A program made the position numbers and the translations under genes. This document shows positions 5,021 to 64,000 of a stretch of 64,000 bases of DNA, in pieces (position 1 is the stretch's first letter; every line of letters starts with the position of its first letter). The DNA is from Macrostomum lignano (Eukaryota), in NCBI GenBank assembly GCA_002269645.1, contig NIVC01003614.1, forward strand, positions 23,621 to 87,620, written 5' to 3'. Under the pieces are notes generated by a model. The model saw nothing but the letters and a program-made list of their open reading frames with translations, had not been told where the DNA came from and ran no database searches.

Positions 5021-20749
<15,729 letters not shown>

Positions 20750-24174: not shown

Positions 24175-43867
<19,693 letters not shown>

Positions 43868-45502: not shown

Positions 45503-46476
<974 letters not shown>

Positions 46477-47058
46477 CCCAACCCTGTGAGAAGCTCAGAA
46501 AAACCGTGTCTAATCTGCACCAGTTTATGTCGTGAATTCTCTATATGATGCGAGTCAGTAGCCAGAACTTCGTTAGTCATGCTCTCAGCTGGGTTTCTCT
46601 GGAACAGGAGTAGATGGGCAGCAAAGGCCTCTGTTCTGCAGGTGGCTCTTCAAGCTCATGCTGACAAGTTTTTTCGTTTGCCATTCTCGCAGGAAACAAG
46701 TTGAAATTTGAGCCAAGAATGTATTGGCCCTCCAGTGCTTGTTCCTCCTTCTCAACTGCACCGCCCCCGCAGCCTCTTCCCCCAGAGCAATCAGATTTAT
46801 CACGGCGCCGGGCGCCCCACGAAGAGCGCCGGTAATGACTTCTGAGAGTTCCACAGGCCCTGCCTTCCCCCTGCCTCCCGATCTGAAGGTTTCCGGGAGC
46901 ACAAGACTGGGGAAAGATGGGGGTGGGGACGGGGCGGCTGGCCGTCAGAGAAGATGTATGCATCGTGTCAGCGCATCCCGCCACTATGGATCCCTGGAGA
47001 CCGTCCGGTTTGATCGCCCAGCCTCTTGATCTTGTTTTTGCTTGCTTTCCTTTTTGAT

Positions 47059-48237
47059 CTCAGAGACTGCTCAACTACCGTCTCAGCGGGGTTGAGGAGG
47101 CTGCAGCCTCAGTGATGAGGCAAGTTTCATTTCTCAGAGACTGCTCAACTACCGTCTCAGCGGGGTTGAGGAAGCTGCAGTCTCGGTGATGAGGCCAGTT
47201 TCATTTCTCAGAGACTGCTCAACTACCGTCTCAGCGGGGTTGAGGAAGCTGCAGCCTCGGTGATGAGGCCAATTTCATTTCTCAGAGACTGCTCAACTAC
47301 CGTCTCAGCGGGGTTGAGGAAGCTGCAGCCTCAGTGATGAGGCAAGTTTCATTTCTCAGAGACTGCTCAACTACCGTCTCAGCGGGGTTGAGGAAGCTGC
47401 AGTCTCGGTGATGAGGCCAGTTTCATTTCTCAGAGACTGCTCAACTACCGTCTCAGCGGGGTTGAGGAAGCTGCAGCCTCGGTGATGAGCCCAGTTTCAT
47501 TTCTCAGAGACTGCTCAACTACCGTGTCAGCGGGGTTGAGGAAGCTGCAGCCTCAGTGATGAGGCAAGTTTCATTTCTCAGAGACTGCTCAACTACCGTC
47601 TCAGCGGGGTTGAGGAAGCTGCAGCCTCGGTGATGAGGCCAGTTTCATTTCTCAGAGACTGCTCAACTACCGTCTCAGCGGGGTTGAGGAAGCTGCAGCC
47701 TCAGTGATGAGGCAAGTTTCATTTCTCAGAGACTGCTCAACTACCGTCTCAGCGGGGTTGAGGAAGCTGCAGTCTCGGTGATGAGGCCAGTTTCATTTCT
47801 CAGAGACTGCTCAACTACCGTCTCAGCGGGGTTGAGGAGGCTGCAGCCTCAGTGATGAGGCAAGTTTCATTTCTCAGAGACTGCTCAACTACCGTCTCAG
47901 CGGGGTTGAGGAAGCTGCAGCCTCGGTGATGAGGCCAGTTTCATTTCTCAGAGACTGCTCAACTACCGTCTCAGCGGGGTTGAGGAAGCTGCAGCCTCGG
48001 TGATGAGCCCAGTTTCATTTCTCAGAGACTGCTCAACTACCGTGTCAGCGGGGTTGAGGAAGCTGCAGCCTCGGTGATGAGGCCAGTTTCATTTCTCAGA
48101 GACTGCTCAACTACCGTCTCAGCGGGGTTGAGGAGGCTGCAGCCTCGGTGATGAGGCCAGTTTCATTTCTCAGAGACTGCTCAACTACCGTCTCAGCGGG
48201 GTTGAGGAGGCTGCAGCCTTGGTGATGAGGCCATTTT
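47059..48237. repeat. 74-bp tandem repeat, ~16 copies
   Basis: CTCAGAGACTGCTCAAC recurs every 74 nt. Confidence 0.96.
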
Positions 48238-48663
48238 CAAACAAGGACTACTTAATAAGAACGATAAAAGATACTAATGTTGTCCTCGATTTTCAACTGA
48301 AACGGAAATAACGACAGTAGCTCGAGACGGACCCGCGGATATCGAAGAGGGGGGGCGAGTTCGATTTGCTTTGCCGACTGCTAATTAATTATAGGAGTTT
48401 GGTTGCTAGGGGGGATGGCGGTCTCCACATATCTGACGCTACTTCACTGATGAGGTGCGCGTATACTCAAGCCAGCTATAGCTCTTGCTACAAGCTTGGC
48501 TGGGCTGAGCTTTGAGTCGGGCCCGTAGCAAGTCACTCACTCCCAAGCGACTCTCGGGTTACCATGCGAGCAGTTTCAAGCAGCCTGTCAATCACCCGGC
48601 TACAGTATTATACTTGATAGCTGGTTCTAGGTAATAATATAAATAGCTTTACCGTTTTCTCAC

Positions 48664-49902: not shown

Positions 49903-50662
49903 AAATCTACGAGTAATTTTAGATTCAGTCGCTGAGGCGCACGAGAGTGACTGTGGTAGCTCTCTTGCTGCGTGCTTGCCACAGGTACAGCTGGATCAGA
50001 AGCTCAGTTTTGTAATTTTTTTTCGATTCTGTCAAGTCTCGGCCAAATCTAGCCAAGCGAAGACATACAACGAGTCAACCAGAGTTATTTGTGTAACGGG
50101 TTCAGTGCAAGGACTTCTATACTACTATGTAGTGGTCCTTGGGTCAGCATATGAGGAGAGTTAAAGTGTGTATTAGGGGTATCCTTGCGGAACTCCATGA
50201 ACAAGCGTTCTACAATTCCGCATATAAACATGCATGCCTCAAGTGCGTAGTTTTCGCCACAAGACACGCAGTATCCATGCAGTGAGAGCCGGATGACCCA
50301 GAAAGCAGAAAGGCGGTAATTGATTTGGGAAAAATCGGTTGCGTACCCGACAAAGGCTTGGAGTGCGCGTCTCTGTGGATCAAAAAATTGATTTGCAATA
50401 GTTGTCCAAGGCATGAAGCCTGTTAGAATCCTTATCAGTCCGTACAAAATGTGAGAAATTACTTGAAGTTTGAGTAAATCAAAGTTATGCAGATCTATAA
50501 GTTTTGGTCTGACAGCTCTGACAGGCCGAGACCGCGTCACCTGCAGCGGCACCAGCGGCACCATAAATGAGAGCCCAGCGACCGAGCCCGAGACCCAATC
50601 AGCAACTCAACCCAGCAGCCAGTCTCAAGAAGCCAGCAACCAAAGCACCCAGCTCAGCAGCC

Positions 50663-50950
50663 ATGTACAACGTCGTCTGCCTGTTCGCTCTCGTGGCCTT
50701 CGCCGCCGCCGCCTACACTCCGGAGCAGAAGAACGAGGTCGTGAACGACATCATTCACGAGGTCGTTCCCGTGCTCAGCATCGACACCAACTGCCTGCTG
50801 CAGAACGGCATCAGCTCCGTGAACTGCCTGATCTCCAACCTGGCCTCCTGCTACTTCGCCCACGGCACCAACATCAGCCAGCTGGCCGGCTGCCTGGCCA
50901 ACAAGTGCGGCGGCAGCGCCATCCAGATTCTCAGCTGCATCAAGCTGTAA
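50663..50950 (+). CDS. Small secreted cysteine-rich protein, 95 aa, family unknown
   Basis: GCCATG start; signal peptide MYNVVCLFALVAFAAAA; 6 Cys in the mature part; extreme C/G-ending codon bias; AATAAA at 50970-75. The real start is Met 50663, not the 50567 start of the ORF track. Confidence 0.85.
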   Translation: MYNVVCLFALVAFAAAAYTPEQKNEVVNDIIHEVVPVLSIDTNCLLQNGISSVNCLISNLASCYFAHGTNISQLAGCLANKCGGSAIQILSCIKL

Positions 50951-52515
50951 TTTTTTAGGATTCAAACTAAATAAATTATCAGAAAGCAAGCGCAAATCGG
51001 CTAAACAAAAATTTGCAGCACTACTGCTTGAACTCTTCAATTTCCCTGCTTGTTACCTTGTTACTTGTTACCAGGTACCAATAAAAAAACATTTTACCTC
51101 GTAAAAGGCAGTGTGCCGTGCTTAATGACTTACACTGCAGCATTAAAATATCTTACCGTTGACCGTTGAGGTTGAGGTACAATTGTACTATTCCGTTCCT
51201 GCAGAGCTTCAAGAAATGCTAATACTATGACTAAAATATACATTTAGCGACAGAACAAAGGGCTGAGAGGGACAAAGATGAACTATGTCGCTCTACATCA
51301 CCTTTCCGTCTCAAGTCAGAACCAGGCACCTGGGCTATATACATGTATACAGCTAACTTGTTCAATACGTCAAGCTTGCATCGGGTTAGAAATGAAAATA
51401 GCAATTTAGTATCACAGATGCGTGCAGAGCTTTTTAAAAATAACGAAAGTCGTTGATGTTGATGTTTAAAACGTCACCTGGAAATTTAACAATTGGTTTG
51501 AACTGCATGTTTTATTCATATTTAATTAAATAATATTAAATAAGTTGCGTGCGGAGACTGACTTCTGAGACTTCTGAGACTGACAGAGACTGACTTCTGA
51601 GTCAGTCAGGCCGGCAAGTGTATGATGTCTGCCTGCTGTGGTATGACTTGAATTGACTAAAAATATTCACTCGTCGATATCGTCCTACCATGGCCAGCAG
51701 TCCTTGAACACGGGTCTGTTTGCTGACTTTTGTAAGTAAAAATGCATAGCGGATGGCCGCACAGAAGTATGAAGTGTACAGCACAATGTACAACCAAGTC
51801 TTTGTATGGATCCAAAATGCTCCATGCTAAAGCTTCGTGGTAAAATTTATTTTCAATAATTCCTCTGCATTAATCTTTTTTTGCGTCATCAGCCGATTGC
51901 AAGGCAGTTCTGTCCCTTAAAAATAGACTAAAGATTCTGCCAGAAGAAACTGGAGCTAGCTATAAAAAAATTGTTGGCTTCTTCAGCAGGCAAATTGTTT
52001 CACTTACCCCGGTTGCCAACCATTCCAGCTGAGGAAACAAACAAGCTGACTGACTCAGAGATATTGGAAATGCGAAAGATTTTCCTCACCCACACTGCAC
52101 CAGGTGCGCTAAGTATAGAGCGCGGCCGAGATAATGGACTTCCATTTGCCTCCATCAAAGCTCCACGTTCGCTGTTCTCCCAAACATGATGCGCTGCTTC
52201 CACTCTAATTCGGCAGTTTTTATCCTCCTGATGGATAAGTTTTCATGCCAAAAATAAAGCCGAAGAGAAATTGCATTTATCGTATTCGCTAGCCGAGACA
52301 AACCACAATTGGGAAGTTTTTCACCCCCAACCGCAGCGATAGGCCGAGCGAGCCAGAGTGACTCGAGCCGATGATGACTTTGGCTAGGATGGGGACTATT
52401 TCACTGAGCTGCACTGAGGACTCTGCTGGGGTCTGCTTCTAATTCTGTCCAGAGACTCATCTGTTGGATTCTGTCAATCTCGATTCAGCAAGCTAATAAG
52501 CCCTAACAAGGCAGT

Positions 52516-52867
52516 ATGACTACCCCAGCTCGGCAGTACACGTTGCTGATGGCCGTTCTTCTCGGCGGGGCCCTGCTGACGCAGCACCTGGCCTCAGCCA
52601 GACCCACCAACGCCAAATTCAAGGACGTCGAAGAGACCGTGGACGAGGCATTGGCTTCGCGGCCGCCTCCACCGCCGCCGCAGCGACTGATGCGAGCTCC
52701 GGACCGACGAACGGTGGAGAACCCGGATGAGCAGCGAGCCAAGCTGATGTCCAGCCTGCTCAACAGCCTGCGATGGTCCGGCCAGATGAGGTGAACAATC
52801 TGTGGCTATTCAAAATAATAAGCATCTGTTACACATTCCTCGATTCTGTTTCAGATTTGGCCGCTGA
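52516..52867 (+). CDS. NPY/NPF-like neuropeptide prohormone, 95 aa, ending GQMRF-G-R-stop (predicted ...QMRFamide)
   Basis: Exon 52516-52790, 64-nt intron 52791-52854 (GTGAAC...TTTCAG), exon 52855-52867. Signal peptide, ENPDEQR motif, phase-2 intron inside the Arg codon of RF, and a Gly-Arg amidation signal. Confidence 0.8.
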
Positions 52868-53929
52868 AGAATCAAACCAAGCTGAAGGCACTCCATCTCT
52901 GATTCACTGTGACAATCAGCTGAGGAAGAACATTTTTCCCGAAAAGCTGTAAAATACACGAAAAAGTTCAGAGAGTTGCGCAGTTTTATTGAATTTGTCT
53001 TAGTTTCAATTTTGTACAACTTTAAAAAAACATAATGAAAAGAGTAATCTATATATGAGCCAGTTTAGTCTAGGAGCAAGCAAGTTAGAATTAAGATATT
53101 GAAGACTTGCTTTTCATTGTCAATGGTCCAAAAGGAGGTCTGTGAAGCGATCAATTTAAGAAGTTTGGCATGCAATTGTGCAGGCCTCTTAGACCATAAG
53201 GAAATAACAGATTTTATTAGACAAACAGAGATATGGCAAATGACGAATAATTTAGAGACGTCGAGAGAGGTGAGAATATTTTGCGATGGCCGAACGTAAA
53301 TAGAAAAGCAGTGCATTCTACGCTACGACATCATGGGGTTGCGGAGATCGAGCAACACAAGCAACTGCTTCTTTCATCACTGGACACCTATTCAGACCAC
53401 AGATACTAAAATGGCTAGATGGGCCACTCAGGCATATATACTTAGTAAAACAGCTTTCTACTTTCAGTTCAGTAGCAAAGAAGAATACATAAGCTATTTT
53501 TTTTAAATAAAGGCGGCTGAAATGACTTTGATAAGTTTAAGAAGCCCAAGCTTGCAGGCGTAAACAACTTGCTAATTGGTTCAGCAATAATGTACATTCG
53601 CCAGTCCACTTTTGCCACTGGGCTGATGCTGTCAATGAGAATTAGACGATCTTAACTTTTTTTCTATGTAGGCTTCAAATAGGGTAATTTTAAATTCAAG
53701 TTACATTTTATGGGTAAGCTTTTATGTACCCCTAATCTCTTCAATAGGTACCCATGTCTCAATTCAAGTTTAGGTATATAAAAGCAATCCCCATGAAGAA
53801 TCATCCCACCTTAGAACCCCCTATTCCCCATGCCCCAGCTACATGAAAGCAAAGCTTAAATTTGAAATCAAAAGCCCATATAGAGACTCAAATAAATACT
53901 CAAATCAAAATTGCAGCTAATTTACTAGC

Positions 53930-54718: not shown

Positions 54719-57214
54719 TCACAAAAAGTTGCATGACTTCAACTTCTCTCGGATGTCCTCGTTGTCATGCCCGTCAATCGTCCGGTCAGCACTGGTCTGC
54801 GTTTGTGTTTCATCATTCTGGTCCTGTTTGTTGTCGATGCTTGACTTCGCTTTGGCAGTTGCAGCACGCATAAGCCGGATGTCCTCCTGCGTGACGGCCG
54901 TCTCCGCCAGGGCGGCGTTCTTCCGTTGCTCCTGCTTCAGAGCCGCCCAGTAGGTGGAGGCTGGGGGGAAGCCGATGAATCCGTAGACCCGTTGGTGGCC
55001 CTTGAACGCGTAGCTGTGGTGCAGGCTGAGGTTCACGGTGCAGCTCAGGTCTTCCCTACCATCCAGTCGCCTCTGTCGGGTGTTGAGGTGCTGCCTGACG
55101 TAGCTGTTCATCGCCTGCAGCAGGCGGTCCAGAAACTTGATGTCTGGCTCTGGTGATCTCGATTCCAAGGCGTGCTTTGGGTGCTCAAGTGAGCCGAAAC
55201 CGAGCATTGGCTGCTCCTGGTGCGGGATGAGCAAAAAGTCCTCAAACAGGTCGAATTCTCCCCGCAACCGCTTCGCGGGCTTCCGTTTTGCGACTTCCGA
55301 CGGCGGGTTCCGGCGCGTCACCAGCAGCTCCGGCATCTTGACCAGCTGCAGCCTGCGAAGCACGTTCTTCTCGTACAGCTTCATTGTAAGACGGGGATCC
55401 TTGTCGCTCGAGCTCGAGCTCTCCTTGGAGTAGGTCCAGAACTCGGTCACGTAGCTCTTGTCGGGCCAGTTGGGGATCGCACAGCTGCTCTTTTTCTGGC
55501 GCACGCCCGGCTTTACAGGCGGATTGCAGACCTCGAAAATCTCCAGGTACTTGGTGTGGTCCGGAACGATGATGTAAGCGAAGAACGCCGGGTAGGCATT
55601 GGTGCGATACTTTCCGTGCGGTACCTGCAGCGTGCAGTGGCCAAGGTTGTAGCTTGTGGTGATGTCCGTGGCCGCCTTCACAAGGTCTTGCCGTTCCTCT
55701 GCGTCCAGACAGTCGTACAGCTGCTTGTGGAACTTGTAGTGCAGCAGGAACCTGGGCAGGCAGTGCACCAGATCGAATCGCACCGTGAAGCTGTCGTTCT
55801 TCCTGCGCGCAAACAGCAGATCGTAGTACTTTGCAACACTATTGAAGGGCGAATTGGCAGCTGATGCCTCTTTTAACTCGCAGCAATCGCATGGATACCT
55901 GCCATCGCTACCATCAACGAAATCCTGGCGAAGCTCTCTGCAGAGCTTGTCTCGTGCTTCCTGCTCTTCTGGGCTTAAGACTTCGGAAGTTGGCGCTGCC
56001 ACGAGGCCGCAGAGGCTGAGCAGCTGTGCTTTGCGTGCCTTCTCTTGCTCAGATTCTCTCTGGTATTCGCTGCGCTTTCCCTGCGATCCATGCTTAGCTG
56101 GCTCAAGCGATGTTTCTAGACGCTGGTTAAAGTCCACAGTGTCCGTCCCAACCTTCGACGATTGCGTGTTGCCAATTGTTTTCGTCGCCTCAACAGGCTC
56201 ATCTCCGCCTTGATTTTCGTCCTCGTTTTCATCAGAAATCACGCCATCAGGCTGGTCTAAGCCGATTCTGCTTCGGGGACCACGGCTGCGCCAACCGTCT
56301 TCTGCGCTTGGCGCGGCGCTCTGAGCCTGGAGCTTAACCAGCCAAGCAAATTCGTAGTCATCGACGCTTTCACCTGGAGTTGGAAGGTGCTTGAACCGCT
56401 GCTTGTGCTGGAGATTGCGATCCTGTAGCTGCAGCTGCTCGTATCTGGCTAGGCGGAACAGCCGCTGACTCGGCAGCAGGCCGGAGTCGTGATCATCTCT
56501 GGCCTGCAAGTACGGGTCCATCGGTAATTCAACGTTGCCCTGCTCGTCTGTTATCTGTCCAAATCTGTCCTCATGAAAGAAGTTCTTCACTTGCTTTTTT
56601 AGCGACCCGATTAAATTAGATTTCTTCTTCTGCTCATTCTTGGTTACCGGAATACCCTGAGTAAGTATCTTCGTGAAGTCGATCGTTTGCACTTGCTCGC
56701 CAACAGGTGCAAAAACGTCTTCGTCCGTCACAGAGGTGTCACTCCGTTCTGTCGGTGTGGCACTTGACAAATCAGTTACTCTTACCTCCCCGCCTTTGGA
56801 AACATTTCTATCCTTAGCGTCGACAGCGTCCTTGCCCTGCGCCGGTTTAGCCGGACTCTGCGGAAGGTTCGGTGTTTGAAGACTAGCAGGAACTGCGCCG
56901 CCTGTGCCGCTCCCAGACTGCGGCTCAGTAGCCCGCGAAATGCCAGAAGCTGCCCGACTGTGACTTCGTTGGACATCCGATTTTGAATCGCCTTTGGTGG
57001 CACTTGATGACAGCGATTTAGCGTTGGTAGATTTAGGATAGGTGGCCACTGACGCTGAATTGGCATCGCTTTTAGTAGAAGCATTTTGCGAGCTCGATCG
57101 ATCCTGGACGCCTACAGAGGACGTTGCCCTGTGCTGCGGCTCAGCCTCTGTAGATGTTGGCCTCTGCTGGCCGATGGATGTCGAGGGTCGATTTGGCACT
57201 GGTGCAGCCAGCAT
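54719..57214 (-). CDS. Intronless hypothetical protein, ~831 aa, with disordered Ser/Thr-rich N-terminus and a predicted folded C-terminal half; family not recognised
   Basis: 2.5-kb uninterrupted non-repetitive ORF. First ATG at 57214 (the track starts at a GTG at 57304). TATAAAAG at 57309-57316; AATAAA at 54699-54704, 15 nt after the stop. Confidence 0.8.
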   Translation of the reverse strand: MLAAPVPNRPSTSIGQQRPTSTEAEPQHRATSSVGVQDRSSSQNASTKSDANSASVATYPKSTNAKSLSSSATKGDSKSDVQRSHSRAASGISRATEPQSGSGTGGAVPASLQTPNLPQSPAKPAQGKDAVDAKDRNVSKGGEVRVTDLSSATPTERSDTSVTDEDVFAPVGEQVQTIDFTKILTQGIPVTKNEQKKKSNLIGSLKKQVKNFFHEDRFGQITDEQGNVELPMDPYLQARDDHDSGLLPSQRLFRLARYEQLQLQDRNLQHKQRFKHLPTPGESVDDYEFAWLVKLQAQSAAPSAEDGWRSRGPRSRIGLDQPDGVISDENEDENQGGDEPVEATKTIGNTQSSKVGTDTVDFNQRLETSLEPAKHGSQGKRSEYQRESEQEKARKAQLLSLCGLVAAPTSEVLSPEEQEARDKLCRELRQDFVDGSDGRYPCDCCELKEASAANSPFNSVAKYYDLLFARRKNDSFTVRFDLVHCLPRFLLHYKFHKQLYDCLDAEERQDLVKAATDITTSYNLGHCTLQVPHGKYRTNAYPAFFAYIIVPDHTKYLEIFEVCNPPVKPGVRQKKSSCAIPNWPDKSYVTEFWTYSKESSSSSDKDPRLTMKLYEKNVLRRLQLVKMPELLVTRRNPPSEVAKRKPAKRLRGEFDLFEDFLLIPHQEQPMLGFGSLEHPKHALESRSPEPDIKFLDRLLQAMNSYVRQHLNTRQRRLDGREDLSCTVNLSLHHSYAFKGHQRVYGFIGFPPASTYWAALKQEQRKNAALAETAVTQEDIRLMRAATAKAKSSIDNKQDQNDETQTQTSADRTIDGHDNEDIREKLKSCNFL

Positions 57215-57308
57215 TATCTGGCGTGAGACTGTAGTCGAGTTAGAGTCGTCTTTTGAGGCTACACAACTTTTATTTTCTCTCTCTAGAACCCGTCGGCAGC
57301 ACACCTTA

Positions 57309-60517: not shown

Positions 60518-63500
60518 ATGATAGGAGCGCTCACCGAGTTTGACCCATTAGCAGTCTACCTAAAAGTCATGAAAGGCCGTCTGGACGACCTGCCGATCAT
60601 GAACAGCCGCGTCGTGCGCATCTTCCTGTCGTCCACCTTCTCGGACATGGGAACGGAGCGCAACTACCTCATGCAGCACGTCAATCCAAGGCTGAAAAAG
60701 TTCTGCCGCGACTCCTTCGGACTCGAGTTTCAAACCATCGACATGCGATGGGGTCGGTGACGAGGTACAGCTCGACCACCAGGGTCCGTACATGTGCTAC
60801 AAAGAGATCGACAACTCGCTCATCATGTCAGCCGGCCCCTACTTCATCTGTCTGCTGGGTCAGCGCTATGGCAACCAGCCGCCTGCAGCCCTTGTCGAGG
60901 TCGACGTTTTCAACAACATCGTGGAAGCGTTGAAGGAGGACGGACGCGACGTCTCGTGTCTACACGAGTGGTACACGATCGATGAGAACAACAAGCCACC
61001 AATCTGCGTGCTGAGACCGATTGCAACTCTAGCAGAGGCGGTAAGTGTGATTTTTAACGATTAATGCAGCGCTTGTTTTTCAGAGTTTGCAAAAGGATAA
61101 ATTTAATAACCTCTAATCTCGTAATTCATTGTTCCAGGCGGACAAGGAGCTCTTGAAAGCTGCTCGACAGCGGTGGGAAGCTGTCCAAGACTCCATCATC
61201 GGACTCATGAAGAGAGGTGCCGAGTTGTGTCTTCAAAAGACTTTGATCTCGCACGCGACAATGAAGAAGTTCACGGCGTCTGTCACCGAGATGGAGGTGA
61301 TCAGCGGAATATTGTCAAAACCTCCGCAAAAGTTGGCTCAGGCTCTCGCATTCGTGAGAGAATTCTCTGATCTGGAGTCTCAGCGCGACTTCTCTCGAGG
61401 AAAGATGTTCAAGTTCATCGACCTGACCGACTCTTTGAACGAAGATGGCGAGGCAGTAAAGGTTCTTGATGAAGCTGTGAACGCGATGGTCAAGGAGTTG
61501 AACAGACACGTTCTGACTCGAATGGCGGGATCCAATTCCTTCACTTACTCACTAAAATGGACCAATGACGCTGAGGGTGTGGGCATGAGTAGCCACAAAG
61601 ACTATCTGGAAAAGTTTGGCAGCGACTACTGCGATAATGTGAAGCGCCTCGTGGCCGAATCCGTGCGGAGAGCATGCGGCTCCGATCGGACGACCTCTAC
61701 TCGGAGGTGCTGCAGCACTCGACTGCATGCGTCAACTACGTGAAGAAGTTCCAGGGTCGGCAAGAGATCATCGACAAGGTGAAAGCTTATGTGCAAGCGA
61801 GCAACACAACGGAGCCTCTGGTGGTGTACGGCGACTCGGGCAGCGGCAAGACCTCTCTACTTGGCAAGGCCGCCAGTCTGGTGCGAAGCTGGTTGCCAGA
61901 GTCCGATTCCAAAGATGCCATCGTGCTGTTGCGATTCCTCGGCACCAGTCCCGGTACGTCGAGCATTCGACAGACACTCAAGTATCTGTGCCTCAGCTCG
62001 CTGTGTTCGGCAACGAGGACGACCAGGAAAAGTGCGAGTCACTCGACGACTTCAAGAGATCTTGAACACCTTCTACTCCATGCTCGAACGCATGGGCCAG
62101 TTCAGGAGAATCTTGGTGTTCCTTGACAGTGTTGATCAGCTGGACAGCTCTGACGGTGCCTACCATCTGACGTGGGTGCGGACGCCATTGCCTGCCAACG
62201 TGAAGATGGTTGTGTCCACTCTGCCCAACATGTTCGATTTGCTGAAGACATTCAAAGGGAAGCTGCCTAACCCAGACATCTACGTGGAGGTGACGCCACT
62301 GGAGACCAGTCTGTGCACCAGCATTTTGTCGGCTCTGCTCAGCGAACAAGGTCGCACTCTGAACGAGCAGCAATGGGCTCTGGTCGAGCAGGCATTCTCC
62401 AAGTGCTCACTGCCAATCTATGTTCACCTGCTGTACCACGAGGTTCTGAGATGGCGCTCTTACCAACAGGTAGATGAGTCGTCTCTGCGCTACACCGTTC
62501 GTCAGGCAATATTTCAGCTGTTCGAGAAACTCGAGTTGAAGCACGCAGGCTTTTTGTAAGTATTTCGTTCGTGTTAGTTACTGTAGCCCAGGCTAGTGAG
62601 AATATTCCACAACTATCCACTTATCTACAGTGATTGGATTATTCTAGTCAGAATGACTCTCTCTGCTCATTTGTTTTTCCAGACCTCTCACGCCCTGGCA
62701 TTTATCACTGCATCGAGAACGGACTGTCAGAGTCGGAGCTGGAGGATCTGCTCAGTCTGGATGACGCCGTCCTCATTGACGTGTTTCAGCATCACCTGCC
62801 GCCCTTCATCCGCATCCCGCCGATCTGCTGGGCTCGACTGCGTCACGACATTGGCTCTTACCTGGTCGAGAGAGAGGCGGACAACATCCGGGTAGTGTTC
62901 TGGTACCACCGACAGTTCATCGAGGTGGCTCAGGAGTACTTCTTGTCGGACGAAAAGACCAGACGGGACATTCACTCTATCATGGCAGACTACTTCTTGG
63001 GTCTGTGGAGCGGCAGGAGAAAGAAGTTCGTGTACCCAGCCTATCTGCGCAAGAAGCTCGTAAGTGATGAGCACTGAAATTGATCTGTTCTCTGAACCGA
63101 CTTACTGAGCCGTTCATGCATTCGTTCTCACTCCAGAACCTGCCCGAGTTCTCAATGGAGGACCGAGCCGTTCCGAGCAGCCATTCGTGCTCCGCAAAGA
63201 TGAGGACGGCACTGCTCAGTACAACCTGCGAAAGCTGAACGAGCTGCCGTGGCACCTCATCAAGTCCGGTCGAGTGAACGAGTTCTACGACTACATTGTG
63301 TTTGACTACGACTTCATGTTCAACAAGCTGAAGGGCACGTCTCGGTACCTGCTGCTGAGAGACCTCGACCTCCCGCAGAAGCTCGGTGTCGAGTACATCA
63401 AAGAGGCCGAGCTCGTGTACAATGCAATCCGACTCTCCGCTCAGAGTCTCGTATACGACCTTCAATCTGAGCGTTGATCTCATCGTCGGCTCATCATACG

Positions 63501-64000
63501 AGAAGGACTGTCCTCGAGTGAAGCTGCTGCTCAACCAGTGTCGCCAGTCGAAACAGGCTCTCAGCAACTGCTGCCTCATCCCGAAGGTGCAGTGCTTCGA
63601 CTCCGGGTCTGGATTCTCTACTCCAGCTTTGATCTCGGACTCGGAATGGGACTGGTCATGCCCAACGGTCAGCTGGTGTCCTTCTCACTCATCAAACAAC
63701 GAAGTCACCTGTACGACATCGAGGAAATGAGATCAAACGGTTCAGCTCCGACTAACAACCTGTTCCTCAGCATGAAGTACATGTCGACTGGATACATCCC
63801 AGGCGACTGCGTAATGCACGTGCTATCGATGCGCTCGAAGAATGCCGGTGTCACCGAGGACGACATGCAGGCGCTTGTCCTTAACATGGGTCGGAAGAAG
63901 ATCCAAGAGGAGATCGAAGAATACGAAGCGTGCAACAAGGATGTGCCGCAAGAGCTGCGAGACATGATGGAATCGCTCAACGCTGGAGAGATTCCAGACA
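60518..64000 (+). CDS. NWD: NWD1/NWD2-type NACHT-domain protein (DUF4062-like N-terminus, P-loop NTPase, helical region); 3' end outside the window; frameshifted in this sequence
   Basis: Motifs [25 protein letters not shown], Walker [10 protein letters not shown], Walker [50 protein letters not shown]. Introns at 61041-61137, 62556-62682 and 63060-63136. About 9 frameshifts are needed to join the pieces, so it is an assembly-error-laden gene or a young pseudogene. Confidence 0.85.

What the first reader, a model, noticed from the sequence alone, without database searches (positions are those of the whole stretch)
52516..52867. Hidden, highly divergent NPY/NPF-like neuropeptide ending in GQMRFamide
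The raw ORF ends at ...WSGQMR-stop and looks unamidated, but a 64-nt GT-AG intron splits the Arg codon (AG|A) and adds F-G-R-stop. A phase-2 intron in the penultimate Arg is the established hallmark of NPY/NPF genes. An acceptor just upstream of the ATG (52488) also fits the NPY layout with a non-coding first exon, although it could be a trans-splice site. The segment PDRRTVENPDEQRAKLMSSLLNSLRWSGQMRF aligns with molluscan NPF (PERP..F.NP.ELR.YL..LNEYY...GRPRF). However, it has lost the conserved tyrosines, changed RPRF to QMRF, and has no C-terminal flanking peptide. An internal RR could release a 28-residue peptide, TVENP...QMRFamide. It may be an unrecognised NPF subtype with a different receptor.
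Basis: partly seen in the sequence, partly recalled or inferred. Interest (0 to 1): 0.8.

Follow-up and report, generated by a model that had tools for sequence, protein, structure and literature searches.

The report
Divergent RFamide neuropeptide gene, NPF-type intron
This is a real, already-annotated gene of the flatworm Macrostomum lignano for a small secreted neuropeptide ending in ...GQMRF-amide; its intron sits exactly where NPY/NPF genes have theirs, but its sequence is not detectably NPF-like, so it is a modest and uncertain addition to a known family.

Summary
ORF 52516-52794 ends ...WSGQMR-stop. A 64-nt GT-AG intron (52791-52854) splits the Arg codon (AG|A) and adds F-G-R-stop, giving a 95-aa precursor. 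It is not hidden. The identical spliced protein is in GenBank (Macrostomum lignano PAA50541.1, PAA55800.1, PAA61126.1; locus tags seen: BOX15_Mlig011138g1, g3). A 98 % identical copy is g4 (PAA48789.1). These models come from an RNA-seq-based transcriptome, and UniProt auto-names the protein an NPFF precursor.

Predicted processing:
- signal peptide, residues 1-28;
- spacer, then cleavage at RR64-65;
- 28-residue TVENPDEQRAKLMSSLLNSLRWSGQMRF-amide.

The intron position and phase match canonical NPF genes that I mapped here in a snail and a tapeworm. The claimed sequence similarity to NPF does not hold:
- no Pfam hit, and no homologue among 1.84 billion representative proteins;
- NPF-profile z of 1.6, against 3.5-7.8 for true members;
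- Arg at -4 and both hallmark Tyr residues are missing;
- the predicted helix is not amphipathic.

Best reading (about 0.5): a strongly derived member of the flatworm-expanded NPY/NPF superfamily. Main rival (about 0.35): a lineage-specific, FMRFamide-like RFamide peptide with a coincident intron. Interest is low to moderate.

The parts
52487..52488 (+). Candidate 3' splice acceptor (ATTCAG|) 27 nt upstream of the ATG. It could serve a non-coding first exon or the spliced leader.
   Evidence: Sequence read. It matches 5 of 6 positions of the M. lignano trans-splice acceptor motif [T/C]TNCAG (PMC8629364). Its use is unverified.
52516..52599 (+). Signal peptide, residues 1-28 (MTTPARQYTLLMAVLLGGALLTQHLASA | RP)
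   Evidence: Basic N-region, hydrophobic core and A-S-A at -3/-1, by inspection of the translation. AlphaFold predicts a helix at residues 5-26.
52600..52704 (+). Propeptide spacer, residues 29-63. It has an acidic stretch, a six-proline run (P50-P55) and an RLMR motif.
   Evidence: Translation. Apart from a short predicted helix at residues 39-45, it is unstructured in the AlphaFold model.
52705..52710 (+). Dibasic Arg64-Arg65, the predicted prohormone-convertase cleavage site
   Evidence: Sequence. Cleavage is inferred. Internal dibasic cleavage of planarian NPY-1 was shown by mass spectrometry (PMC2953531 supplement).
52711..52790 (+). Exon-1 part of the predicted mature peptide: T66 to the first two bases of the Arg92 codon (TVENPDEQRAKLMSSLLNSLRWSGQM + AG)
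   Evidence: Residues 70-93 are predicted helical with pLDDT about 80.
52791..52854 (+). 64-nt GT-AG intron, phase 2, inside the Arg92 codon
   Evidence: The same position and phase occur in the Bradybaena and Sparganum NPF genes. It is identical in the paralogous locus L001 except for one base.
52855..52867 (+). Coding part of exon 2: third base of Arg92, Phe93, Gly94 (amide donor), Arg95 (basic site), TGA stop
   Evidence: The product is identical to GenBank PAA50541.1, PAA55800.1 and PAA61126.1.
53229..53243 (+). Second, unannotated 'AG|A TAT GGC AAA TGA' (Arg-Tyr-Gly-Lys-stop) in phase with the same donor. It may be an alternative or relic terminal mini-exon, or a coincidence.
   Evidence: This pattern occurs only twice in 64 kb on both strands (0.09 expected). 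The acceptor is weak: it is GAG, the third AG in a row, with a py-tract of 0.40. There is no similarity beyond the motif, and the isoform is not in the protein collection.

Best explanation
The locus is one of four near-identical copies of a transcribed Macrostomum lignano neuropeptide-precursor gene (Mlig011138).

Shown: two coding exons are joined across a 64-nt phase-2 intron, giving a 95-residue prepropeptide.

Inferred from standard prohormone processing:
- the signal peptide is removed after Ala28;
- a prohormone convertase cuts after Arg64-Arg65;
- carboxypeptidase removes Arg95;
- Gly94 is converted to a C-terminal amide.

This yields the 28-residue, largely helical peptide TVENPDEQRAKLMSSLLNSLRWSGQMRF-NH2 (monoisotopic [M+H]+ 3292.67).

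The coding sequence is interrupted between the second and third base of the Arg codon that precedes the terminal Phe-Gly-basic. That is exactly the arrangement in NPY/NPF genes from vertebrates to flatworms. The gene is therefore most likely a strongly derived paralogue of the flatworm-expanded NPY/NPF superfamily. It has lost the RxRF motif and the conserved tyrosines and now carries an FMRFamide-like MRFamide end. It presumably signals through a peptide GPCR that need not be a classical NPF receptor.
For: - ORF, splice sites and product.
- The identical spliced protein is deposited for M. lignano, with a paralogous locus in the same gene order.
- The annotation is RNA-seq based: PMC5730564.
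- The acceptor is the best of 40 candidates, and one of only two that give [F/Y]-G-[K/R]-stop.
- The intron hallmark is documented in the literature.
- I reproduced it in canonical NPF genes of Bradybaena similaris (AG|G, 6255-nt intron) and Sparganum proliferum (CG|G, 5525-nt intron).
- Ten of the eleven planarian npy genes share it, including atypical npy-11.
- Planarian npy-7 and npy-10 also lack a C-flanking peptide. Several planarian npy precursors have an N-terminal spacer followed by a dibasic site.
- Gly at -5 and Leu at -13 coincide with the NPF consensus.
- The right-anchored profile score is weakly above shuffles (p 0.01-0.06).
- A C-terminal helix is predicted at residues 70-93.
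Against: - There is no sequence-level support. No Pfam family matches at E <= 10, including Hormone_3.
- There is no homologue among 1.84 billion representative proteins.
- The NPF HMM score is equalled by 12-15 % of shuffles.
- In the -26..-6 region the anchored z is 1.6 with a negative score. True members score z 3.5-7.8 with positive scores in leave-one-out.
- Pairwise alignment to three flatworm NPFs is no better than shuffles.
- Arg at -4 and Tyr at -10 and -17 are absent.
- The helix is not amphipathic: muH is 0.25, against 0.42-0.52 in NPFs.
- The six-proline run lies outside the predicted mature peptide.
- The CDS has 8 AG|R proto-splice sites, so a coincident intron position has a chance of up to about 12 %.
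- No peptide, receptor or orthologue data exist.
Confidence: 0.5

Rival explanations
1. It is a lineage-specific RFamide neuropeptide, an N-terminally extended FMRFamide-like peptide, that does not descend from NPY/NPF. The intron in the Arg codon arose independently at an AG|A proto-splice site.
For: - The C-terminal tripeptide MRF-amide is that of FMRFamide. M. lignano makes FMRFa and YMRFa from another precursor, Mlig001796.g3 (bioRxiv 10.1101/2022.03.23.485451).
- There is no significant similarity to NPF by Pfam, HMM, profile or pairwise tests.
- The gene is an orphan in a 1.84-billion-protein search.
- The CDS has 8 proto-splice sites, so a coincidence is not negligible.
Against: - The intron position and phase are exactly those of NPF genes. 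The literature treats this feature as NPY/NPF-specific, and sNPF/PrRP-type genes have their intron elsewhere.
- The precursor has a single long (28-aa) peptide at its extreme C-terminus, unlike multi-copy short FLP precursors (established knowledge).
- Gly at -5 and the absence of a flanking peptide are both seen in planarian npy genes.
Confidence: 0.35
2. It is an NPFF-type precursor (Pro-FMRFamide-related neuropeptide FF), as UniProt's automatic name for A0A1I8HF43 says.
For: The UniRef name is shown. The protein has an RF-amide end followed by GR.
Against: - No Pfam family of any kind matches at E <= 10.
- The end is QMRF, not PQRF.
- There is one peptide copy rather than several.
- NPFF-type signalling is represented in protostomes by SIFamide (established knowledge).
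- The name is an unreviewed automatic label.
Confidence: 0.03
3. It is a small secreted protein that is not processed into an amidated neuropeptide. The RFGR end is incidental.
For: There are no peptidomic or expression data. The protein has no homologues.
Against: - A signal peptide, a dibasic site and a terminal aromatic-Gly-basic-stop form the canonical amidated-peptide layout.
- The motif AG|R-[F/Y]-G-[K/R]-stop is expected only 0.09 times in the whole window.
- The motif sits behind the best acceptor of the 40 candidates.
Confidence: 0.08

Closest known systems
Schmidtea mediterranea npy-1 to npy-11 (expanded planarian NPY/NPF superfamily; Collins et al. 2010, PMC2953531)
   Same: - They are small single-peptide precursors, and 10 of the 11 genes have the intron in the Arg codon before the terminal residue.
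- npy-7 and npy-10 end at G or GKR with no flanking peptide.
- Several have an N-terminal spacer plus a dibasic site.
- npy-11 shows that atypical C-termini are tolerated.
- NPY-8A is 29 aa, close to the 28 aa predicted here.

   Different: - All nine planarian members whose sequences I read keep RPR[F/Y/L], and most keep the YL..LN.Y core.
- The M. lignano peptide has QMRF, with Ser and Leu in place of the two tyrosines.
- It scores outside the family range and has no Pfam Hormone_3 hit.
Canonical invertebrate NPF genes (Moniezia expansa NPF, Mair et al. 2000; Bradybaena similaris and Sparganum proliferum genes mapped here)
   Same: The intron has identical position and phase (xG|N within Arg, followed by F-G-basic), as shown and cited. 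Gly is present at -5.
   Different: - Canonical genes continue into a C-terminal flanking peptide, often with a second intron.
- Their introns are 5.5-6.3 kb, against 64 nt here.
- Their peptides carry GRPRF and both tyrosines.
FMRFamide-like peptides, including the M. lignano FMRFa/YMRFa precursor Mlig001796.g3
   Same: The C-terminal -MRF-amide is shared.
   Different: - This gene encodes a single 28-residue peptide rather than short multi-copy peptides.
- No sequence relation was detected by phmmer.
- The gene structure of Mlig001796 was not examined.
Vertebrate NPFF precursor (the source of UniProt's automatic name)
   Same: The peptide ends in RF-amide followed by Gly-Arg.
   Different: It lacks the PQRF motif, has one peptide copy, and matches no Pfam family.

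Membership tests
NPY/NPF superfamily | Phase-2 intron between the 2nd and 3rd base of the Arg codon that precedes the C-terminal F/Y | tested here: met
   AG|gtgaac...tttcag|A TTT GGC. Positive controls were mapped here: Bradybaena AG|G and Sparganum CG|G. The literature is cited.
NPY/NPF superfamily | C-terminal Arg-Phe/Tyr followed by a Gly amide donor and a basic site | tested here: met
   The product ends ...MRF-G-R-stop. Amidation itself is inferred.
NPY/NPF superfamily | RxR[F/Y] C-terminus (Arg at -4, e.g. RPRF or RQRY) | tested here: not met
   The end is QMRF, with Gln at -4. All 40 family peptides collected have RPR[F/Y/L], though that motif was also the extraction criterion.
NPY/NPF superfamily | Conserved aromatic core (Tyr at -10 and -17; YL..LN.Y) | tested here: not met
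   The peptide has Ser at -10 and Leu at -17. Only Leu at -13 and Gly at -5 coincide with the consensus.
NPY/NPF superfamily | Detectable sequence or profile similarity (Pfam PF00159 Hormone_3 or a family HMM) | tested here: not met
   - No Pfam hit at E <= 10.
- The HMM score is matched by 12-15 % of shuffles.
- Anchored z is 1.6, against 3.5-7.8 for true members.
- Flatworm NPF pairwise alignments give p 0.16-0.97.
NPY/NPF superfamily | Single long peptide (about 28-40 aa) per precursor | tested here: met
   One RFG site is present, and a 28-aa peptide follows RR64-65. The cleavage is predicted, not shown.
NPY/NPF superfamily | PP-fold: N-terminal polyproline segment packed on an amphipathic C-terminal helix | tested here: inconclusive
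   - A helix is predicted at residues 70-93 with pLDDT about 80, from a single sequence.
- Its hydrophobic moment of 0.25 is no better than shuffles, against 0.42-0.52 in NPFs.
- The six-proline run lies upstream of the RR cleavage site.
NPY/NPF superfamily | C-terminal flanking peptide after the GKR site | tested here: not met
   The stop codon follows directly after G-R. The feature is not universal: planarian npy-7 and npy-10 lack it too.
NPY/NPF superfamily | Ligand of an NPY/NPF-type GPCR | not testable with these tools
   This needs receptor deorphanisation. The only GPCR in the window is aminergic, D2/5-HT1-like.
FMRFamide-like peptides (FLP) | C-terminal x-[M/L/I]-R-F-amide | tested here: met
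   The peptide ends in Q-M-R-F-G.
FMRFamide-like peptides (FLP) | Short peptides, usually several copies per precursor, each flanked by basic sites | tested here: not met
   There is a single RFG site, and 28 residues separate the nearest dibasic site from the C-terminus.
NPFF / RFamide-related peptide precursors | PQRF-amide (or LPxRF-amide) motifs, usually two or more per precursor, with Pfam NPFF similarity | tested here: not met
   The end is QMRF and occurs once. No Pfam family matches at E <= 10.
Luqin / RYamide-type precursors | Peptide directly after the signal peptide, and a C-terminal precursor region with two conserved Cys | tested here: not met
   A 35-residue spacer (plus the RR dibasic site) precedes the peptide. 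The precursor ends at G-R and contains no Cys. The family definition comes from established knowledge.

The most novel reading that the evidence does not exclude
The gene descends from NPY/NPF but has exchanged the RPRF pharmacophore for an FMRFamide-like MRF-amide end. It would then be a natural intermediate showing how a long NPF-type gene can drift into FLP-type ligand space, with a switch of receptor. The second in-phase mini-exon at 53229-53243 (R-Y-G-K-stop) might also be used, giving RF-amide and RY-amide isoforms from one gene by alternative terminal exons.
Probability: 0.08. Interest if true: 0.6.

Novelty: new member of a known kind. Interest (0 to 1): 0.3.

Why it matters
Flatworm NPY/NPF peptides control muscle, feeding and, in planarians, sexual maturation. 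Their receptors are considered as anthelmintic targets.

Macrostomum is an early-branching, genetically tractable flatworm. My NPF-profile search of public proteins found no canonical GRPRF-type NPF from it. If this gene is NPF-derived, it shows how far the ligand can drift while the gene structure is retained. It would also be a candidate ligand for orphan flatworm GPCRs.

If it is not NPF-derived, it warns that the 'Arg-codon intron' hallmark alone can mislead. In either case it is a single, uncharacterised, already-annotated gene, so the impact is modest.

Tried and rejected
The 861-aa neighbour ORF is not on record.
- The homologue searches found only the gene's own copies (k-mer search, full phmmer over 1.84 billion representatives). 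No orthologue alignment or covariation-type argument was therefore possible.
- The paralogous locus L001 is 99 % identical throughout, so exon-versus-intron conservation is uninformative.
- Pfam found nothing.
- Literature searches for QMRFamide or GQMRF found nothing relevant. No open paper catalogues M. lignano NPF-like peptides.
- McVeigh et al. 2009 is not held in the library. Koziol et al. 2016 did not turn up in the search. Prior listing in those papers cannot be excluded.
- An NPF-profile search retrieved no M. lignano NPF. This absence is inconclusive.
- I considered whether the nearby GPCR could be the receptor. It is aminergic.
- I considered exon duplication for the RYGK mini-exon. 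There is no similarity beyond the motif.
- Rfam finds nothing in the window.
- The first HMM scripts failed on a command-line option clash and were re-run.

Full report
**What is in the sequence**

The + strand has an ATG at 52516 that opens a 92-codon ORF ending ...WSGQMR-TGA at 52792-52794.
- The last Arg codon, AGG, overlaps a donor, AG|GTGAAC, with GT at 52791.
- Sixty-four bases later comes TTCTGTTTCAG| (AG at 52853-52854), followed by A TTT GGC CGC TGA.
- Joining 52790 to 52855 gives a 288-nt CDS of 95 codons ending ...GQM-R-F-G-R-stop. The intron lies between the second and third base of Arg92.
- Exon 1 is 65 % GC (GC3 0.75) and the intron is 36 % GC.
- Of the 40 AG dinucleotides 30-450 nt downstream of the donor, the one at 52854 has the strongest pyrimidine tract (0.75). 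It ends in CAG, the cis-acceptor motif reported for this species. The donor GTGAA is close to the reported GT[G/A]AG.

**Whose gene it is, and whether it is hidden**

The spliced protein finds one cluster in 5.8 billion proteins, and it is from Macrostomum lignano.
- The exact 95-residue sequence is deposited three times: PAA50541.1, PAA55800.1 and PAA61126.1. The locus tags seen are BOX15_Mlig011138g1 and g3.
- A 98 % identical copy (T3A, D63N) is g4, PAA48789.1.
- UniProt (A0A1I8HF43) gives the protein the automatic name 'Pro-FMRFamide-related neuropeptide FF'.
- The g4 locus (L001) has the same neighbours as the window: a small upstream gene, an 850-aa gene on the opposite strand and an NWD1-like NACHT gene. 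It is 99 % identical in DNA, including the intron. This fits the known redundancy of the DV1 assembly (PMC5730564).
- The Mlig gene models were built from RNA-seq (StringTie/TACO plus a de novo assembly mapped to the genome), with ORFs called by TransDecoder. A deposited protein ending in RFGR therefore implies an assembled transcript that uses this junction.
- The unspliced 92-aa product and the products of other acceptors are not in the 15-billion-protein collection.

The splice is real and public, not hidden. What is unrecognised is the kind of peptide. I found no paper that describes it, but the two main flatworm neuropeptide catalogues could not be read.

**Anatomy of the product**

- Residues 1-28 have a basic N-region, a hydrophobic core and A-S-A before the predicted cut. 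AlphaFold predicts a helix at residues 5-26.
- Residues 29-63 form a spacer with an acidic stretch, six prolines (P50-P55) and RLMR.
- Arg64-Arg65 is a canonical convertase site.
- Residues 66-93 are TVENPDEQRAKLMSSLLNSLRWSGQMRF.
- Gly94 is the amide donor and Arg95 the basic residue.
- The predicted amidated 28-mer has a monoisotopic [M+H]+ of 3292.67.
- AlphaFold, run on a single sequence (mean pLDDT 68.5), places a helix on residues 70-93 with pLDDT about 80.

All processing steps are inferred from general prohormone rules. Internal dibasic cleavage of a planarian NPY precursor has been seen by mass spectrometry.

**The case for NPY/NPF**

The literature states that NPY/NPF genes share an intron between the second and third base of the Arg codon of the terminal RF/RY. 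The related sNPF/PrRP-type genes have their intron elsewhere.
- Ten of the eleven planarian npy genes have this intron, including atypical npy-11, which ends in RPRL-amide.
- I checked the hallmark directly. In the snail Bradybaena similaris the NPF gene reads ...CCC AG|gtaagc...ctgcag|G TTT GGA AAG AGG, with a 6255-nt intron.
- In the cestode Sparganum proliferum it reads ...CCA CG|gtagga...atttag|G TTC GGA AAA AGG, with a 5525-nt intron.
- The M. lignano gene has the same position and phase.
- Its odd features have planarian precedents. npy-7 and npy-10 have no C-flanking peptide. npy-3, -4, -8 and -10 have an N-terminal spacer before a dibasic site. NPY-8A is 29 residues long.

**The case against**

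Nothing at the sequence level supports membership.
- No Pfam family matches at E <= 10. Most true members retrieved carry PF00159.
- phmmer over 1.84 billion representative proteins finds only the gene itself.
- I built a family set of 40 NPF/NPY peptides from a profile search seeded with planarian NPYs.
- An HMM built from that set scores the M. lignano peptide no better than 12-15 % of its own shuffles.
- A right-anchored profile gives z 1.6-2.7 (p 0.01-0.06), depending on the columns used.
- In a leave-one-out test on the -26..-6 region, every true member scores z 3.5-7.8 with positive scores. This includes the most divergent arthropod NPFs and planarian NPY-7 and NPY-11. The M. lignano peptide scores z 1.6 with a negative score.
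It vanishes against the three flatworm NPFs, which should be closer relatives, and against a second non-flatworm NPF (p 0.16-0.97).
- Arg at -4 is Gln. Tyr at -10 and -17 are Ser and Leu. Only Gly at -5 and Leu at -13 coincide with the consensus.
- The helix has no amphipathic moment: 0.25, no better than shuffles, against 0.42-0.52 in NPFs.
- The proline run lies outside the predicted mature peptide.

**How much the intron alone is worth**

With one intron in a 288-nt CDS, a random position would coincide 0.35 % of the time. If introns arise only at AG|R proto-splice sites, there are 8 such sites, which gives about 12 %. The intron is therefore good evidence but not conclusive.

The C-terminal MRF-amide is that of FMRFamide. 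M. lignano has a separate FMRFa/YMRFa precursor, Mlig001796.g3. A lineage-specific, extended FLP-like peptide is therefore a serious rival.

I put NPF descent at about 0.5, an unrelated RFamide at about 0.35, a non-neuropeptide at about 0.08 and NPFF at about 0.03. The NPFF name has no support, because there is no PQRF motif, no Pfam match and only a single peptide copy.

**Verdict**

Expanded and atypical NPY/NPF families with this intron are already known in flatworms. This is therefore at most a new, very divergent member of a known kind. It would be worth a line in a Macrostomum neuropeptidome and a receptor test, but it is not a surprise to a specialist. Interest is 0.3.

**Side observations**

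(a) A second AG|A TAT GGC AAA TGA lies at 53229-53243. It is in phase with the same donor and would give ...QMRY-amide.
- The motif AG-[AG]-[F/Y]-G-[K/R]-stop occurs only at these two places in the 64 kb on both strands. The expectation is 0.09 in the window and 3e-4 within 450 nt.
- Its acceptor is a GAG, two bases after a CAG and ten after a TAG, with a poor pyrimidine tract.
- There is no flanking similarity to the first mini-exon.
- The isoform is not on record.
- It may be a coincidence, a relic or a rare alternative exon. RNA-seq junction reads would settle it.

(b) One canonical NPF-like prepropeptide retrieved as a family member (P0028) is encoded without an intron on a gene-dense 34.7-kb metagenome contig.
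- The contig carries a Pox_A32-type packaging ATPase above the Pfam cutoff.
- An adjacent gene has a weak NCLDV-type capsid hit.
- A discoidin-domain protein on the contig matches phage 'tail protein' families.
- This looks like a polinton-like or double-jelly-roll virus that carries an NPF mimic. One library search did not find this described.

(c) The window's GPCR exons are aminergic, not NPY-receptor-like.

Noticed in passing
window 53229-53243 (+); same motif at L001 10713-10727: A second 'AG|A TAT GGC AAA TGA' (Arg-Tyr-Gly-Lys-stop) lies in phase with the donor at 52790/52791, 376 nt after the annotated F-G-R-stop mini-exon. The pattern occurs only at these two places in the 64 kb on both strands (0.09 expected). 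It would give a ...QMRY-amide isoform. The acceptor is weak (GAG, the third AG in a row), there is no flanking similarity to the first mini-exon, and the isoform is absent from the protein collection.
   Followed up: partly
L005 10001-10219 (= L002 3001-3219), JGI metagenome 3300056599, contig Ga0558124_04980 (34.7 kb): A canonical NPF-like prepropeptide is encoded without the hallmark intron on a gene-dense contig. It has a signal peptide, the sequence ...DDYLRRLNEYYIIIGRPRF-GKGRR and a Pfam Hormone_3 hit. The contig carries a Pox_A32-type packaging ATPase (L005 2088-2714, 32.4 bits against a cutoff of 22.8). It also has a neighbouring gene with a weak NCLDV capsid-N hit and a discoidin-domain protein that matches phage tail-protein PHROGs. 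This looks like a polinton-like or double-jelly-roll virus carrying a host-hormone mimic. One literature search did not find it described.
   Followed up: partly
window 43415-43867 (-) and 27055-27993 (-): Two exons of a rhodopsin-family GPCR lie at least 15 kb apart: TM1-2, and TM3/4-5 with a long Gln-rich third loop. The best PDB matches are dopamine D2/D3/D4 and 5-HT1A receptors. It is an aminergic receptor, not an NPY/NPF-type receptor for the neighbouring peptide.
   Followed up: partly
whole window, e.g. 611-1133, 13607-15363, 33174-34669, 40402-42000, 45503-46475, 47058-48239: Tandem Repeats Finder returns 60 rows of minisatellite and microsatellite arrays (periods 3-164 nt, up to 243 copies). 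These arrays produce most of the long 'ORFs'. This fits the 15 % simple and tandem repeat content reported for the M. lignano genome.
   Followed up: no
window 54719-57304 (-): An 861-codon uninterrupted ORF lies immediately downstream on the opposite strand. It has no Pfam match, and this exact product is not on record. The paralogous locus has an 850-aa called gene in the same place (L001 12506-15058). Function is unknown.
   Followed up: partly
window 61129-64000 (+): This is the start of an NWD1-like NACHT/STAND gene. It has a Pfam HTH_NWD1 hit at 62634-63077. The paralogous locus encodes an 1841-aa protein with NACHT, AAA_16 and WHD_NWD1 domains. Overlapping ORFs in different frames suggest several short introns.
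   Followed up: no
window 50567-50950 (+): A small ORF about 1.6 kb upstream of the peptide gene contains an internal Met followed by a signal-like hydrophobic stretch (MYNVVCLFALVAFAAAA) and several Cys. It has no Pfam match. A 124-aa gene is called at the corresponding place in L001 (7941-8315). It is possibly another small secreted protein, and could share a transcription unit with the peptide gene if the 52488 acceptor is a spliced-leader site.
   Followed up: no
protein database search: A profile of planarian NPY/NPF peptides retrieved planarian, cestode, mollusc and arthropod NPFs, but no M. lignano protein at E <= 10. Either canonical GRPRF-type NPFs are missing from the M. lignano annotation, or the species lacks them.
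   Followed up: no
window 52489-52515 (+): The M. lignano spliced leader ends in ATG. If it were trans-spliced at 52488/52489, that ATG would open a 6-codon upstream ORF (ATG CAA GCT AAT AAG CCC TAA). This uORF is in frame with the main ATG and terminates before it.
   Followed up: no
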